Shown here piece by piece: positions 18,141-50,969 of a DNA stretch of 64,000 nucleotides; position 1 is the stretch's first letter, and each line of letters begins with the position of its first letter. Under the pieces are notes generated by a model, which was not told where the DNA came from, made no database searches, and was given only the letters and a program-made list of their open reading frames with translations. The DNA lies in assembly GCF_963853765.1 (NCBI RefSeq), contig NC_088859.1:8680001-8744000 (forward strand), in the 5' to 3' direction. The DNA comes from Magallana gigas (Eukaryota). The position numbers and the translations under genes were made by a program.

Positions 18141-19556
18141 ATGGGTGATACGGAAACAAACTCCTCTGGCTTGAACCTCAACCAAACCAAGGTTTGGGAA
18201 TCTGCAGTTCCTCCTGCCTTGCAGTTTGCCTTGGGCGTGGTAGGAAATTTGATTGCCCTTGTTGTTCTGGTCACATCAGCCAAATCTCACAAGTGGAAAC
18301 CTTTCTACAGGCTAGTTGGAGGTTTAGCTCTCACAGACGGGGGAGGAATTCTTCTGGTCTACCCAACAGTTATGGTTAGATATGCCACGGACTTTACATA
18401 CGTTTTTCCAAAACCTCTTTGTGACTACAGTTCTTTTATATATACATTTACTTTGATTTCTTCGGCAATGATCGTGTGTGCAATGTCCCTTGACCGATTT
18501 TGGGCAATTTTATTTCCGTTTAAGTACAATACTAACACGAAAAATAGGCGAACAAACATAATGTTGATTTCGATCTGGATTGCTGGAGCTTTCATATCAT
18601 CTCTTCAACTCATGGGACTTGGTTCAAGTTTCAACTATTATCCTGGTTCCTGGTGCTTTTTGAATTTTGTTGGTCTTACGACAATGGACAGACTCAGCTC
18701 TTACATTTACTCGTTGCTTGGTCTATCCATTCTGTTGACAACAATTGGGCTAAACTCGATAGTGATACTGACTGTATGCAGAGGTATGAATTCAAACATC
18801 AGACAGCAGCAGACTGGAAGACGAAGAAAGAAAAACGACGTCTTCATCGTCATATTTCTAATGATCATTGTTATCGTTTTTAGCGTCTGCTGGGCACCAC
18901 TCATGGTAAGCAATATTACCTTAAACGTTACTGTAACAAAACATCTATTCACAAAGGGTTATCATAATTTGTTTTGGAACAACATATATTCCGATTACAA
19001 ATAAGATTATACTGGCCAAAGAATTATTGTCTCCAAATAGCATTTTTCGCCAGAACATGTTACGCTGTTTTCAAATGTATAATCTACTTTGTAAATAAAA
19101 CTACGTAAGAATTGGTACTTGGCGCGCATTGGTCTTAGACGAAAACCCAAATGTAGATTATATTGATACTTTATGATAAAAGGCAATGTCTTATGTTTCC
19201 AATATTGATAAAAGCAGTAGCTTACATTTAATTTTGTTATAAAGGTCACGATACTTGGTCACGCTGGAAGATGGTTACATGGCAATGGAGCCCGAGAACT
19301 GCTGGTGCTGAGATTTGCCGTAAACAATTCTGTCATAGATCCATGGATTTATATCCTTCTTAGAAAGGAAACATTCATAGCCATGAAGAGACACAGCAGG
19401 GGTCTCTGTAAAACCCTGTTTGACAGACTGGATATTCCCACAGAGTCTGGTCTTCCAGAATCCACTCCAAACGAAGTCAGTGGTTGCGGCAAAAGTATGG
19501 AAAAGACCATATCCACAGACGACCAGATCTCGTCGACTGTTTTGCACAAACTATAG
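18141..19556 (+). CDS. PTGER4-like: Prostanoid (EP4-like) GPCR, copy 1; exons 18141-18905 and 19245-19556; 358 aa
   Basis: 7 hydrophobic segments; GVVGNLIA (TM1), LALTD (TM2), MSLDRF (TM3), YYPGSWCF (ECL2), CWAPLM|V (TM6), R...DPWIYILLR (TM7). GTAAG donor at 18906; acceptor AG at 19243-19244. N-terminal NSS/NQT sequons. The vertebrate subtype cannot be assigned from motifs alone. Confidence 0.93.
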
Positions 19557-22500
19557 GATGTTGCAAAATATATTTTTTTCTTTGCCGATATGTTCAGCTA
19601 ATCCCAAGACACTCATATTGATAAAATGTATTTTGTTTTTCAATGACAAAAAAATACCCAATGTTAATTCAAATTTTATGTGCTCATTTGTAAAGTATCT
19701 TTACGCACATAAATTGAATTGAAGATTATCGTGCCATGGTATAACTTGGTAGTTATTATTAGATGATCGATGGAACTATATGAAATTTAAAGAGTGTAAC
19801 ACTACTCAGGGGTCCTTTCACATAGATGATAGATCATGTTCTTGTAATACCCGCATAGTGAAAACCCCGAAAAGAATATGTGTTTATCCCCCGTGATTTT
19901 TGTTTGTATTAAATGGCATTGTTAATAATATATTTATAAATGGATTGTGAAATTCTCCCTTTATTTGTTATCTCAATTTTGTTATTGTTGAAACACTTTG
20001 CAATAAATATGTAAAAACAAAGATTTTTTCAATATCTAATACAATAAACCATAAATGTCCCACTAAACTAATGCACACGAAATATTTCACAGATATCTTT
20101 AATAAAACTGCTTTAGATTTAAGGATAACTTATATATGTTCAAATGACAAATGTGCTTAAAAAATGGGTGTTGAAATAATTCAAGGTGTATACTTATATA
20201 TAAAAACTATTGCAATGTTTCATTAACATTCTATTCAATAGGTAAATTATAAATAAAATACGGAAATCTAATCCTACAATGATGGATGATAATTTGAATT
20301 GAGGATATATGTCGTACATGTGAAATTCCTCACATGTAGGTTGTGCATCACGAATTGATTATTTTGTCTATGTTTTATTATGACCTCTTTATCGTACTAG
20401 CCAAATGATCTTTTCTGTGTTAAACAATACGTTGAAAGTTTTCCAATAGTATTTTCTGTAAATAATTGGTATTAAGATATTTGATGCTGAAAAGTTGTAA
20501 GGCACAGGAGAACATTATTTATCAAAATAAAGGAAAGAATAGATCATAATTATCAGCTATCGATATCTTTTTTCATAAACGATTTCCATATTGATTTTAG
20601 AAATGTCCCTGAATATGTCCATTAATTAAAGATAGAAAAAATAAACTTTGATGAAAAAAAATTACAATAACAAGTTCCAGGAAACGTTCTACATTTTGAA
20701 ATCCTTTATCGGACAGCTTTTTTCTCTCAAATTGAATTCCACCCTTAAAAACAAGAAAAACATAAATTACTTGTATAATAATTGCATCTACAAATATTAC
20801 CTAGTAATATAACTGGAAGAAAAGCTCTTCATAAAGATGTAAGAAAATGTTCAAACTGCAATTTTAAAATAATTAGAATTTTTTTCTTTACTTAAGTAAA
20901 TAAAAGTTAATAGCATAGAACATCATATCTTAAAATTCAAGGTATGTCTGATGGTTAAACTGTTGACCATCCAACTCTCTTAAATCAGTGATGTTAATTG
21001 TTGCTGATTGACAATTGTAATATTTTTTATTTCAAGGGTCATTAAAATGCGGTTCAATGACTCTTTATATACGTAGAGGAAAAAATTATCATTTAATATT
21101 TCGTTAGTACATTAGGGGAAGGGGGAGGGGCTGAGATACCAAAGCAGTCTCGTCATAAATAGTATAGCCATATTGTAAGGTTTGGTAAATATTTCAAAAT
21201 ATTAACGGCATTTTATCAGATTGAAGCCGTTTCAATGATAGTATTCTTTGTAAACCCTCAAGAAATACATGTCTTCAAACTTCGATTTTTAGCACAAAAG
21301 TGAAATATTACACTAAATATTAGTTTGATTATCTTATAGCTTATTTGTAAGAAGGTTTCAATTCGCAAAAAAAAAAACATATATCAAACTATTGTTTTCA
21401 GAATAACTATATGCGCAGTTTAAATGTCAATATAATATGAAATATACAATGCATCAGTTGTGCATCAAACATCTAAATAAATAAATAAATATTTGCATAA
21501 AATGATAGGGAAGTTTTAAACAGGAAAAATAACACTGCATGTTATGAGAACAGAAGCTTCCGTGATGGTTGCTTTGGGTGTAATATGTATTTTATTCATA
21601 TATGAATTTCATATACATGTATGTAAGTATTTTTAAAAAATTCAAATGTGAAACTGAAACATATTTCGTTTCCCGTATTGATAAGAGCGAATGGTTATTC
21701 TTAGGATTCCTTGAGTTAAACTGCGTTCCACTGCATATTAAATAAGAAAACTGATATTTATTAAATTATTTATTATTCAGATCTTCATGCCTCATGTTTA
21801 AAAAGCAAATGTAAGTACGTATGTACTACAAGTGTGTTTGTCCTTATTTATTATACAGAGTTCGAGTTGGTACACATTTGAGTCGAACTGATACATTTTT
21901 CCTTTCAATTCAAACACAATGTACATTATATTAGTTAACTCGTCATTTTATCCAATGCAGAACAGCGTTGCTCTTGTATGTTAATAGCTGTTCAGAAGAC
22001 TGAACAGTAATGTTTTTGTTTATCTCCTTTTTCTTTTTTCTAAATTTTATAAACGGATCTTTTCTTTCTTTATTTTTGGGAATAAAAGTTGCAATTTTGA
22101 AATGCTCATTTCCATTAAATATGTTAAAAATTTAAAAAAAAATATTTTTTAGTAATTAAAATCACTTCTGGATGTGAAAGAATTTACAATTTAAAAAAAC
22201 AAGCTTTATTTGTTCTTGAATAATCGTTTGCACTTCTAACATCCCATCGAGAGCATTGTTATCAGATTGAAACGTCATTATACACAGTTGACGACACTTC
22301 CATTTAGCTAATATGTTGTCCATAAATTCTCAACAAAGTGGAAATATCTTAATTTATTTTAAGTACTCATAAAACTTCATCCAACATATCACATGCAAAA
22401 TAAAACTACTTCACAATATATCAAATTAACATACACAGAATCTTTCCGATGTAATCAATTTTAGATCATGATGATGTGATTGCCAAATGCGTGATTAGAA

Positions 22501-49736: not shown

Positions 49737-49786
49737 AAGGTTGGCTGTTAGAGTGTGGCAAACAACACAAAGCCCCTTCTAACAGA

Positions 49787-50969
49787 ATGGATCTAGAGAA
49801 AGAATTTGAAATTTCCACTGCTTCTAATAGTACCGATGGCCCAGCAATATCGGGCTCCTCAATGCCCGCGGCTCTGCAATTTGTCTTCGGTGTGCTTGGC
49901 AACCTGATTGCCATTATTGCACTTTTCACTGCTAGAAAGAAACACAAATGGAGACCGTTTTACAGACTGGTTCTAGGTTTAGCTTTGACTGATGGTGGAG
50001 GGATTTTGTTGATTTTTCCAACAATCTTTCTTCGATATGCATCGAATTTCACCTACGATTTTCCAAAACCTCTCTGTGACTACAGTTCATTTATGTTCAT
50101 ATTCACGCTGACGTCTTCGGCAATGATTGTCTGCGCATTATCTTTTGACCGCTTTATGGCCATTTTGTATCCGTTTCGCTACAATATGATTGGGAAGAAA
50201 TACCGAGCCAACATAATGTTAGGACTGGTGTGGATAACCTGTGCTTTCCTTGCAAGCTTGCCACTGATGGGCCTAGGATCCAGTTTATCATATTATCCGG
50301 GTTCTTGGTGTTTTTTAAACTTCGTAAGTTTATCAACTCTAGACAGAGTCAATTCCTTCATTTATTCTATAATCGGACTGTTTATTCTGCTTACAACATT
50401 CATCTTTAATCTGTGTGTGGTCATAACCCTCTGCAGAAATCTCGCGACAAACAAAAGAATTTCTCAGAAAAGCAGGAAGAAAAGCGACATCTTCAACGTT
50501 GTCTTCTTGTTGGTTTTAGTTTTGGTCTTTGCAACCTGTTGGACTCCACTTATGGTATAAAACTTTTTTCAAATATATCTTTTGCAAAATAAGGAGGTTT
50601 TTTCTTCTTCTTTAGTGTGTACATTTACTTTTTAGATCCTTTTATGCATTTTTGGTCATTTTCTTTTTACTTCAGATTGTTATATTTGGACATGCCGCGG
50701 CGTGGGCGGCGGATAATGGCAAGTTGGAATTGTTTGTCGTCCGTCTTGCAGTCACAAACTCCATTGTCGATCCCTGGATCTATATCCTGTTCCGAAAAGA
50801 AAATATGATTCTAATTACACGAAAAATCGGAAACATCTGGGGCAAAATAAGCGTTTCAAGCAGCAGTGTTAGCAATGACGTCATACCGTCGTCAGATGCA
50901 CGCAAACAAAGCTTTGAAAATACGCTGTCGTCTGCCAGAACACTATCTACAGACGATGTCACTGTTTAG
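49787..50969 (+). CDS. PTGER4-like: Prostanoid (EP4-like) GPCR, copy 5; exons 49787-50554 and 50676-50969; 353 aa
   Basis: GVLGNLIA, LALTD, LSFDRF, YYPGSWCF, CWTPLM|I, VRLAVTNSIVDPWIYILFR. Donor at 50555; CTTCAG acceptor ending 50675. AATAAA at 50977-50982. Confidence 0.93.

What the first reader, a model, noticed from the sequence alone, without database searches (positions are those of the whole stretch)
18141..50969. Tandem array of five intact prostanoid-receptor-like GPCRs plus a pseudogene and a stub
Seen: seven related units, all on +, over 33 kb, with an identical phase-0 intron after TM6 P-L-M and exon 1 lengths of 762-768 nt. Established: vertebrate prostanoid receptor genes share an intron near the end of TM6, the DPxxY TM7 variant and the Arg7.40 carboxylate anchor, all present here, but they are dispersed single-copy genes. 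Inference: a lineage-specific birth-and-death expansion of eicosanoid sensing in a bivalve. The receptors combine an EP4-like TM1-TM2 with a CWxP TM6 (EP1/EP3/FP/TP-like), so automated EP4 labels may mislead about ligand and G-protein coupling.
Basis: partly seen in the sequence, partly recalled or inferred. Interest (0 to 1): 0.7.

Follow-up and report, generated by a model that had tools for sequence, protein, structure and literature searches.

The report
Oyster tandem array of prostaglandin-type receptors
This stretch of Pacific oyster DNA carries five working copies, one dead copy and one small fragment of a prostaglandin-type cell-surface receptor gene; they arose by recent local duplication, the genes are already annotated, and the array is one part of a much larger oyster-wide expansion of this family.

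Summary
Five intact two-exon genes lie on the + strand. Exon 1 is 762-768 nt and ends at CWxPLM|GT in phase 0. There is also a decayed exon-1 copy (44237-44758) and a 37-nt TM7 fragment (48212-48248). The N gap (36568-36699) lies between U3 and U4 and touches no exon.

The window is Magallana (Crassostrea) gigas. My five gene models equal RefSeq proteins residue for residue, all named "prostaglandin E2 receptor EP4 subtype(-like)". U1 is the orthologue of the published C. hongkongensis PTGER4.

Sequence, predicted fold, Arg7.40, DPWxY, the ECL2 WCF hairpin and the intron all place them in the prostanoid receptor family. A fish EP1c gene has its intron at the same residue and phase.

U2, U3, U4 and U6 form a Crassostrea-only clade (100/100) beside WDR18, and that synteny is shared with Saccostrea. 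All copies are under purifying selection. U4 evolved faster and lost Y2.65 and the ECL2 Pro and Trp.

The array continues upstream of the window. The genome holds at least 38 such loci in several arrays.

Ligands and coupling are untested, and orthology to a vertebrate subtype could not be tested. The finding is sound but only moderately novel.

The parts
11501..11767 (+).
   Evidence: Transcript contigs L002 and L003 align in three blocks: 11501-11767 (97.8-98.8%), 17977-18907 and 19244 onward.
18141..18905 (+). U1 coding exon 1 (255 codons, TM1-TM6); the transcribed exon starts near 17977
   Evidence: Equals residues 1-255 of RefSeq P0121 (XP_011416239.3), 255/255.
19245..19556 (+). U1 exon 2 (TM7 and tail, 103 codons plus stop); the 3' UTR runs to at least 20021
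   Evidence: 103/103 to P0121. The TM7 motif reads LRFAVNNSVIDPWIY.
27225..27989 (+). U2 exon 1 (255 codons); carries Leu instead of Cys at position 6.47
   Evidence: 255/255 to P0104 (XP_065922349.1). AALWTPLM here against AACWTPLM in the C. angulata orthologue.
28179..28469 (+). U2 exon 2 (96 codons plus stop)
   Evidence: 96/96 to P0104.
34057..34821 (+). U3 exon 1 (255 codons)
   Evidence: 255/255 to P0106 (XP_034311890.2). Spliced transcript L005 matches at 98.9%.
34996..35286 (+). U3 exon 2 (96 codons plus stop)
   Evidence: 96/96 to P0106. L005 matches at 99.8% and its alignment resumes at 34995, next to the predicted acceptor, the 3-base overlap being the usual GT/AG ambiguity.
36568..36699 (.). 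Assembly gap between U3 and U4, in intergenic sequence
   Evidence: No unit exon lies within 1.2 kb. Not filled and not looked up.
39074..39835 (+). U4 exon 1 (254 codons); the fast-evolving copy, with Y2.65F, ECL2 P to T and W to V, and a 2-residue deletion before C3.25
   Evidence: 254/254 to P0112 (XP_019920812.3).. A spliced Logan transcript protein, P0116, carries CWTPLM-IVIFGH.
39942..40229 (+). U4 exon 2 (95 codons plus stop)
   Evidence: 95/95 to P0112. The acceptor is CTTCAG|ATT.
44237..44758 (+). Pseudogene: an exon-1 remnant closest to U2/U3 (72-74% nt)
   Evidence: nhmmer finds pieces 44237-44422 and 44430-44758 with model positions 189-314 and 657-768 missing. The pieces lie in three frames. 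There are 2 TGA and 1 TAA stops inside. Three-frame read-out. Present in C. angulata locus L001.
48212..48248 (+). Stub: a 37-nt fragment of the TM7 core of exon 2
   Evidence: nhmmer E 0.0012. The translation reads LVVRFGFTNSIV. 97% conserved in C. angulata L001.
49787..50554 (+). U6 exon 1 (256 codons)
   Evidence: 256/256 to P0143 (XP_011420893.3). Best solved-structure match is EP4, E 4.7e-36.
50676..50969 (+). U6 exon 2 (97 codons plus stop)
   Evidence: 97/97 to P0143. The Arg in VVRLAVTNSIVDPWIY aligns with the TM7 Arg of FP, EP1 and IP.
54300..59620 (+). WDR18 orthologue that anchors the 3' end of the array (approximate limits)
   Evidence: A 444-aa WD40 gene is called in the C. angulata locus L001. 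The exon at 56847-57140 matches human WDR18 at E 9e-29 against 2e-16 for the next WD40 protein. The same gene follows the last receptor copy in S. cucullata L010.

Best explanation
What it is. [quoted passage not shown]

Shown:
- Five copies have intact two-exon reading frames, and three of them (U1, U3, U4) have spliced transcripts.
- All five are under purifying selection.
- All five keep the TM7 arginine (7.40), DPWxY, W6.48 and the C3.25 and ECL2 cysteines that form the family's disulfide. Four keep Tyr2.65 and the full ECL2 P-x-S-W-C-F hairpin.
- The array grew by local duplication. One ancestral gene next to WDR18 gave U2, U3, U4 and U6 within the Crassostrea lineage, and U2/U3 are the newest pair.
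- A second ancestral gene gave U1 and two copies just upstream of the window.
- One copy has decayed to a pseudogene and a TM7 fragment is left over.

Inferred:
- Each receptor binds a carboxylate-bearing oxylipin such as PGE2. The carboxylate would be held by Arg7.40, Tyr2.65 and the ECL2 Ser/Thr under the hairpin lid, as in human EP3 and EP4, and the signal would pass through a heterotrimeric G protein.
- The copies have split up expression domains or ligand preference.
- U4 has lost Tyr2.65 and the ECL2 Pro and Trp but remains constrained, so it probably has altered ligand affinity or specificity.
For: Family:
- Pfam 7tm_1 E 2.7e-39.
- The best 17 PDB sequence matches are all prostanoid receptors, with EP4 at 4.7e-36.
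- The AlphaFold model (pLDDT 78.9, with an ECL2 hairpin) has prostanoid receptors as its top 30 fold matches, EP4 TM-score 0.88-0.89.
- Residue table.
- The intron has the same position and phase as in fish EP1c.

Gene models: identical to RefSeq proteins. Spliced transcripts for U1, U3 and U4.

Selection: dN/dS is 0.12-0.33 in exon 1 for all pairs.

History:
- Careful maximum-likelihood tree: U2+U3+U4+U6 at 100/100; that clade lies in a 13-row group (99/96) with the Saccostrea and Ostrea genes, and the quick tree puts it next to the WDR18-adjacent ones (88). U1 plus two upstream copies at 99/94, sister to S. cucullata P0015.
- WDR18 synteny.
- U2 and U3 are 88% identical over 2.5 kb including non-coding DNA, with dS 0.087.
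- U2 and U3 each have their own orthologue in the C. angulata assembly.

U4: Tajima relative-rate chi-square 5.3-13.1 and loss of near-invariant residues.

U1: orthologue (344/358) of C. hongkongensis PTGER4, reported as involved in immune challenge (cited in PMC4726814).
Against: - No ligand, coupling or expression pattern was tested here.
- Spliced transcripts were not found here for U2 or U6; those two rest on RefSeq models only.
- U2 carries Leu at the near-invariant Cys6.47 in this assembly.
- U4 lacks three near-invariant pocket or lid residues.
- Subtype orthology to vertebrate receptors could not be tested because only one vertebrate sequence could be retrieved.
- What the assembly gap holds is unknown.
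Confidence: 0.8

Rival explanations
1. The copies descend from prostanoid receptors but no longer serve internal prostaglandin signalling. On this view the oyster-only radiation, including this array, has become a sensor set for other lipids or environmental oxylipins, that is, a chemosensory or immune-sentinel role.
For: At least 30 M. gigas loci fall in one oyster-plus-Pinctada-only clade with a long stem (100, length 0.84). Scallops and mussels appear only in the separate conserved clade. That conserved type (P0153, next to the array) is more vertebrate-like, scoring 143 bits to EP4 with a SWNQILDPW TM7. U4 has changed pocket residues. Two paralogues elsewhere carry Glu at position 7.40.
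Against: Arg7.40, Tyr2.65 and the ECL2 lid are kept in most copies. The U1 orthologue was reported as a PGE receptor gene tied to immune challenge; I take that from the paper's title as cited and did not read the paper. Taxon sampling of the word search is biased towards close relatives, so 'oyster-only' is provisional.
Confidence: 0.17
2. U4, and perhaps U2, are functionally dead or dying copies whose open frames simply have not yet been broken.
For: U4 has Y2.65F, ECL2 P to T and W to V, a 2-residue ECL1 deletion and a 2-3-fold excess of unique substitutions over U6. U2 has Cys6.47Leu in this assembly.
Against: U4-U6 dN/dS is 0.20 in exon 1. The same U4 substitutions and an open frame are present in three further proteins: an older M. 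gigas RefSeq version (P0005), C. angulata (P0113) and a Logan transcript (P0116). A full-length spliced U4 transcript exists (P0116). The U2 change is absent from the C. angulata orthologue, so it may be a single allele.
Confidence: 0.1
3. Part of the array is an assembly artefact, with U2 and U3 being two haplotypes of one gene placed in tandem.
For: Oyster haplotypes are very divergent: window against the C. angulata locus is 96.4%. A gap lies 1.3 kb after U3.
Against: U2 and U3 lie on one gap-free stretch (14564-36567). Their non-coding DNA differs by 12%. Each has its own closer orthologue in the independent C. angulata assembly: U2-P0105 252/255, U3-P0103 254/255. Transcript L005 matches U3 at 98.9-99.8% but U2 at 96.2% and 91.7%.
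Confidence: 0.03

Closest known systems
Human prostaglandin E2 receptor EP4 (PTGER4; for example PDB 7D7M, 8GCM)
   Same: It is the best sequence match (128 bits over TM1-TM6) and the best fold match (TM-score 0.88-0.89, 33-34% identity). It shares Tyr2.65, the ECL2 Ser/Thr-Trp-Cys-Phe, Arg7.40 and DPWIYIL.
   Different: EP4 has Ser at 6.48 (CSIP) where the oyster genes have Trp. EP4 is 488 aa with a long tail, against 349-358 aa here. EP4 has ERY at the end of TM3 where these have DRF. Orthology to EP4 in particular was not tested.
Crassostrea hongkongensis prostaglandin E receptor 4 (ChPTGER4, AIT37779.1; Qu et al. 2015, Fish Shellfish Immunol 42:316, cited in PMC4726814)
   Same: It is the orthologue of U1: 344/358 residues identical, in the same 90% cluster, and sister to U1 in the tree.
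   Different: It was described as a single gene. From what I could read, the tandem paralogues, the pseudogene and the genome-wide radiation were not part of that description. The paper itself was not readable here.
Vertebrate EP1 and FP receptors (PDB 9M1H, 8IUK; Pagrus major EP1c gene)
   Same: They are the best matches for TM6-TM7 (39 and 36 bits). They share CWxP and the R...DPWxYIL(L/F)RK motif. The fish EP1c gene has a phase-0 intron two residues after Pro6.50, exactly as here.
   Different: They match TM1-TM5 much less well than EP4 does (FP 48 bits; EP1 not among the best 60 matches, against 128 bits for EP4).
Other tandemly expanded receptor and immune gene families of bivalves (C1qDC, IAP, HSP70, nAChR; PMC6835236, PMC8917759, PMC11268181, PMC6896357, by their titles and abstracts)
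   Same: The mode of evolution is the same: lineage-specific tandem duplication, with pseudogenes left behind.
   Different: The protein family is different. I found no open-access paper that treats the prostanoid receptor family this way.

Membership tests
Prostanoid receptor family (class A GPCR: EP1-4, FP, DP1, IP, TP) | Seven-transmembrane rhodopsin-type domain | tested here: met
   PF00001 at E 2.7e-39 (U6) and 5.6e-35 (U4), covering the full profile 1-260. Seven helices plus helix 8 in the model.
Prostanoid receptor family (class A GPCR: EP1-4, FP, DP1, IP, TP) | Closer in sequence and fold to prostanoid receptors than to any other GPCR | tested here: met
   The 17 best PDB sequence hits are EP4, IP, TP, EP3, DP1 and EP2, from 4.7e-36 to 1e-13, before the first outsider. 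The top 30 Foldseek hits are all prostanoid receptors.
Prostanoid receptor family (class A GPCR: EP1-4, FP, DP1, IP, TP) | Arg7.40 in TM7 (carboxylate anchor) and DPxxY in place of NPxxY | tested here: met
   All five copies have R...DPWIY. The Arg aligns with the TM7 Arg of FP, EP1 and IP. That it anchors the carboxylate is established knowledge and was not tested here.
Prostanoid receptor family (class A GPCR: EP1-4, FP, DP1, IP, TP) | ECL2 beta-hairpin with the conserved W-C-F, the Cys partnered with C3.25, plus Tyr2.65 | tested here: met
   U1, U2, U3 and U6 have all of these. A hairpin is predicted at residues 166-177. U4 is the exception: Y2.65F, and ECL2 P to T and W to V.
Prostanoid receptor family (class A GPCR: EP1-4, FP, DP1, IP, TP) | Conserved intron at the end of TM6 | tested here: met
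   All five copies read CWxPLM|GTA in phase 0. So do 22 of 22 parsed paralogues in the genome. Pagrus major EP1c has CWSPFL|GTGAGT at the same residue and phase. That this holds for all vertebrate subtypes is from my own knowledge (Narumiya et al. 1999).
Prostanoid receptor family (class A GPCR: EP1-4, FP, DP1, IP, TP) | Binds and signals in response to a prostanoid | not testable with these tools
   This needs cell assays. The only lead is the published C. hongkongensis orthologue of U1.
EP4 subtype specifically (the database name) | Groups with vertebrate EP4 to the exclusion of other subtypes in a phylogeny | not tested
The word searches returned only one vertebrate sequence (fish EP1c).
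EP4 subtype specifically (the database name) | Ser at 6.48 (C-S-x-P), as seen here in EP4 and IP (EP2 and DP1 from my own knowledge) | tested here: not met
   All five copies have Trp6.48. EP4 aligns as CSIP and IP as CSLP, while EP1 and FP have CWSP.
EP4 subtype specifically (the database name) | Highest similarity to EP4 along the whole length | tested here: inconclusive
   True for TM1-TM2 (61 bits against 30 for the next receptor) and for TM1-TM6 overall. Not true for TM6-TM7, where EP1, FP, IP and EP3 outrank EP4.

The most novel reading that the evidence does not exclude
The oyster-plus-pearl-oyster-only clade of about 30 prostanoid-receptor-derived genes, of which this array is one block, may be a diversified sensor set for different oxylipins. 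These could include external ones such as algal or diatom oxylipins, conspecific spawning cues or microbial lipids. The single conserved bivalve-wide gene next to the array (P0153 type) would keep the ancestral internal prostaglandin role. U4, with its rebuilt pocket entrance, and the two paralogues with Glu at 7.40 would be members that have already left carboxylate-prostanoid recognition.
Probability: 0.17. Interest if true: 0.65.

Novelty: new member of a known kind. Interest (0 to 1): 0.35.

Why it matters
Prostaglandins are used in oyster spawning and immunity research, and "EP4" transcripts are often listed in oyster RNA-seq studies as if there were a single gene. There are five near-identical names in this 33 kb, at least eight members in the local cluster and about 38 in the genome. 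Some copies are 95% alike at the protein level. Read mapping, qPCR primers and functional claims about "the oyster EP4" are therefore ambiguous unless the copy is named.

The array offers natural experiments on receptor evolution: a young pair (U2/U3), a fast-evolving copy with an altered pocket (U4) and a dead copy. The exact conservation of the TM6 intron between oyster and fish dates that gene structure to before the protostome-deuterostome split.

This does not change what is known about how prostanoid receptors work.

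Tried and rejected
- Seventh unit. I looked for a complete extra copy. Protein searches at E up to 10 found none. Only a DNA profile picked up the 37-nt TM7 fragment.
- Hidden copy at the gap. Nothing family-like lies within about 1.2 kb to the left or about 2 kb to the right of the gap (the nearest is a weak exon-1-like hit at 38770-38801, E 0.062), and the U3-to-U4 spacing (5.0 kb) is like the other spacings. The gap's content is unknown and I did not look it up.
- Haplotype artefact for U2/U3. 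Rejected.
- Gene conversion between U2 and U3. dS (0.087) is close to the non-coding divergence (12%), so there is no sign of it.
- Vertebrate-wide phylogeny. Three word searches gave bivalve proteins and a single fish EP1c. EP4 was shut out of the first search by the length filter.
- Literature. Eight searches and several paper look-ups found no open-access description of this array or of a prostanoid receptor expansion in oysters. The Qu et al. 2015 paper is not in the library.
- Joined exons. I never joined exons into a typed or submitted sequence. Exons were searched separately by reference. For full-length work I used the database proteins that equal the models.
- ORF at 17144-17650 (-). 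It has no Pfam match.

Full report
WHAT IS THERE

tblastn with one unit as query, a family HMM on six-frame translations, and DNA profiles of both exons all give the same picture. There are five complete two-exon units on the + strand:
- U1: 18141-18905 / 19245-19556
- U2: 27225-27989 / 28179-28469
- U3: 34057-34821 / 34996-35286
- U4: 39074-39835 / 39942-40229
- U6: 49787-50554 / 50676-50969

There is also a broken exon-1 copy at 44237-44758 and a 37-nt match to the TM7 core of exon 2 at 48212-48248 (E 0.0012).

Exon 1 is 765, 765, 765, 762 and 768 nt. It ends (C/L)-W-x-P-L-M followed at once by GTA, and exon 2 follows an AG. The intron is therefore phase 0 and 106-339 nt long.

The pseudogene is spread over three frames, holds several stops and lacks two internal pieces and the TM6 end. 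The small fragment could be its displaced exon 2 rather than a seventh unit.

THE GAP

The gap at 36568-36699 lies 1.28 kb after the U3 stop and 2.37 kb before the U4 start. No exon or family-like sequence lies within about 1.2 kb on the left or 2 kb on the right of it. The ORFs listed across it are runs of X.

The left flank is still inside the U2/U3 duplicated block (36233-36492 matches 30289-30546). The right flank has no counterpart downstream of U2.

WHOSE GENOME, AND ARE THE MODELS RIGHT

Cluster look-up shows proteins on a 53,672,946-bp record of Magallana gigas, the same length as contig C7 of the window's assembly.

My exon pairs equal five RefSeq proteins residue for residue:
- U1 = XP_011416239.3 (358 aa)
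- U2 = XP_065922349.1 (351 aa)
- U3 = XP_034311890.2 (351 aa)
- U4 = XP_019920812.3 (349 aa)
- U6 = XP_011420893.3 (353 aa)

All are named prostaglandin E2 receptor EP4 subtype(-like). I compared exon by exon and never submitted a joined sequence. Full-length work used those database proteins by id.

Intron-less transcript contigs confirm the junctions for U1 and U3. For U4, a full-length spliced transcript protein carries CWTPLM-IVIFGH. The U1 transcripts also reveal a non-coding first exon at 11501-11767, 6 kb upstream. For U2 and U6 I found only exon-1 contigs.

FAMILY

- Exon 1 of U6 matches solved EP4 at 4.7e-36, then IP, TP, EP3, DP1 and EP2. The first non-prostanoid receptor comes only at 1e-13.
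- Exon 2 aligns its VVRLAVTNSIVDPWIYILFRK with the TM7 of FP, EP4, TP and EP1, Arg on Arg.
- An AlphaFold model of U6 (pLDDT 78.9, seven helices, helix 8, an ECL2 hairpin) has prostanoid receptors as its 30 best fold matches, with EP4 first.
- All five copies carry N1.50, D2.50, C3.25, DRF, W4.50, the ECL2 Cys and Phe, W6.48, P6.50, R7.40 and DPWIY.
- By counting along the alignment, U6 Tyr84 is EP4 Tyr80 (2.65), and U6 Ser173-Trp174 is EP4 Thr168-Trp169. From my own knowledge these are contacts for the prostaglandin carboxylate and the lid.

THE INTRON

I fetched the gene of the one vertebrate relative I could retrieve, Pagrus major EP1c. Its first coding exon ends CWSPFL|GTGAGT, in phase 0, two residues after Pro6.50, exactly as in the oyster genes. 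The same split is seen in 22 of 22 parsed paralogues across the oyster genome.

THE 'MIXED' CHARACTER

Residues 20-110 score 61 bits to EP4 and 30 to the next receptor. Residues 228-300 score best to EP1 (39), FP (36), IP (34) and EP3 (31), with EP4 at 28. EP1 and FP share CWxP, while EP4 and IP have CSxP.

I read it as retention of ancestral states, since Trp6.48 is the general class A state, and not as a chimera. It does mean that 'EP4' is a best-hit label and not a demonstrated orthology.

HISTORY

- A careful tree of 29 exon-1 sequences puts U2, U3, U4 and U6 in one clade (100/100). That clade lies in a 13-row group (99/96) with Saccostrea and Ostrea genes. The quick 76-row tree puts it next to P0007, P0009 and P0008 (support 88); in the careful tree that three-way fork is unresolved. 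U1 and two copies just upstream of the window form a clade (99/94) sister to S. cucullata P0015.
- In S. cucullata, P0009 is the last of two tandem copies and is followed 3 kb later by WDR18. In the window, U6 is followed by WDR18.
- The locus is therefore old, and the four-fold increase is specific to the Crassostrea lineage.
- U2 and U3 are 88% identical over 2.5 kb including intron and flanks, with dS 0.087. dS is 0.76 for U4-U6 and 1.0-1.4 between the two pairs.
- dN/dS is 0.12-0.33 in exon 1 for every pair.
- C. angulata has separate orthologues of U2 (252/255) and U3 (254/255). Its assembly shows the same order of pseudogene, fragment, U6 and WDR18 at 96-97% identity. The copies are not collapsed alleles.

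U4 AND U2

U4 carries 31-34 unique substitutions against 10-16 for U6 (chi-square 5.3-13.1). It differs at four or five of the family's most conserved positions: A66T, Y84F (2.65), P171T and W174V in ECL2. It also has a two-residue deletion before C3.25. An older M. gigas RefSeq version (P0005) shows the same residues at these positions, and the C. angulata (P0113) and transcript (P0116) versions also keep an open frame at 97-98% identity; a spliced transcript exists.

U2 has Leu for Cys6.47 in this assembly only.

WIDER CONTEXT

A six-frame search of the whole assembly finds 44 matches, 38 of them uninterrupted exon-1 frames.
- Just upstream of the window lie a pseudogene (contig C7 8,659,827), two intact copies (8,665,222 and 8,669,427) and one diverged copy on the other strand (8,676,742).
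- Further arrays lie on C7 (20.2, 28.2 and 50.3 Mb), C3 (45.8 and 60.5 Mb) and C9 (24.9 Mb).
- At least 29 loci have a recognisable exon 2 with Arg7.40 and (D/N)PWxY.

In a 95-row tree rooted on the fish gene, 30 M. gigas loci, including the window's five, fall in a clade that holds only oysters and Pinctada (support 100). This root is a single long branch, so it is provisional. Scallop and mussel sequences join a separate conserved clade with the opposite-strand neighbour. That neighbour is closer to EP4 (143 bits) and has a vertebrate-like SWNQILDPW TM7.

WHAT IS KNOWN

U1 shares a 90% cluster with, and is sister to, the C. hongkongensis 'prostaglandin E receptor 4' AIT37779.1 (344/358). That gene was published by Qu et al. 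in 2015 as involved in immune challenge.

In the open library I found no paper describing the array or the expansion. Papers mention 'EP4-like' genes singly: in Pinna (prostanoid-like GPCRs in PMC13093298; an EP4-like gene under positive selection in PMC13745860) and in jingle shell tentacles (PMC11682238). One paper notes an expansion of prostaglandin dehydrogenases in C. gigas (PMC8835781).

VERDICT

The observation and most of the interpretation hold. The genes are bona fide members of the prostanoid receptor family by every sequence, structure and gene-structure test I could run. Ligand, coupling and subtype orthology remain untested. The genes are annotated and one has a studied orthologue, so the novelty lies only in the uncharacterised tandem radiation. 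Interest is moderate.

Noticed in passing
Own genome, contig C7 8,659,827-8,677,470 (3-20 kb upstream of window position 1); loci L037, L014, L013, L027: The array continues upstream of the window. There is one pseudogene (5 stops), two intact + strand copies of the U1 clade, and one diverged - strand copy. That last copy is of the bivalve-wide conserved type, with abundant transcripts (P0153, 162 cluster members).
   Followed up: partly
Own genome: C7 20.2, 28.18-28.20 and 50.27-50.33 Mb; C3 45.78-45.87 and 60.53-60.55 Mb; C9 24.94-24.95 Mb; plus singletons: At least 38 uninterrupted exon-1 loci of this family lie in several tandem arrays. Nearly all have the same TM6 intron. About 30 fall in a clade seen only in oysters and Pinctada.
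   Followed up: partly
Window 18141-18905 (U1 exon 1) compared with transcript loci L002-L004: Public transcripts equal to an older C. gigas RefSeq protein (XP_011416238.1) differ from U1 by 8% in the coding exon (dS 0.35, dN/dS 0.07). Their UTR exons match the window at 97-99%. No second locus in this assembly fits them better. This suggests two very old allelic forms of U1, each as far from the other as from the C. hongkongensis gene, or else a copy-number variant.
   Followed up: partly
Loci L026 (C7 32.82 Mb) and L028 (C7 37.46 Mb): Two paralogues have Glu in place of Arg7.40 (LGIEMAT(A/T)NS(V/I)IDPW), which would reverse the charge at the presumed carboxylate anchor.
   Followed up: no
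Window 11501-11767 and 14941-15093: The non-coding first exon of U1 has a diverged second copy (87%) 3.3 kb downstream of it, just after the assembly gap at 14318-14563.
   Followed up: no
Window 27998-28090, and the start of the U3 intron near 34830-34900: A (CT)n microsatellite starts a few bases after the splice donor in U2 and U3. It accounts for part of the difference in intron length and produces the long 'LSLSLS' read-through ORFs.
   Followed up: no
Window 36809-36977 and 37843-38011: A pair of inverted repeats (78% over 169 nt), 0.87 kb apart, lies just to the right of the assembly gap. It may be the ends of a small transposable element.
   Followed up: no
Window 27975-27977 (U2 codon for position 6.47): U2 reads Leu-Trp-Thr-Pro where its C. 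angulata orthologue and all other copies read Cys-Trp-x-Pro. This is either a private allele of the reference animal or a recent change.
   Followed up: partly
Window 17144-17650 (-): A 168-aa ORF lies directly upstream of the U1 coding exon. It has no Pfam match and is probably a remnant of a repeated element.
   Followed up: partly
Window about 54300-59620 (+): A WDR18 orthologue (exon match to human WDR18 at E 9e-29) lies next to the last receptor copy. The same arrangement is seen in C. angulata and Saccostrea cucullata.
   Followed up: yes
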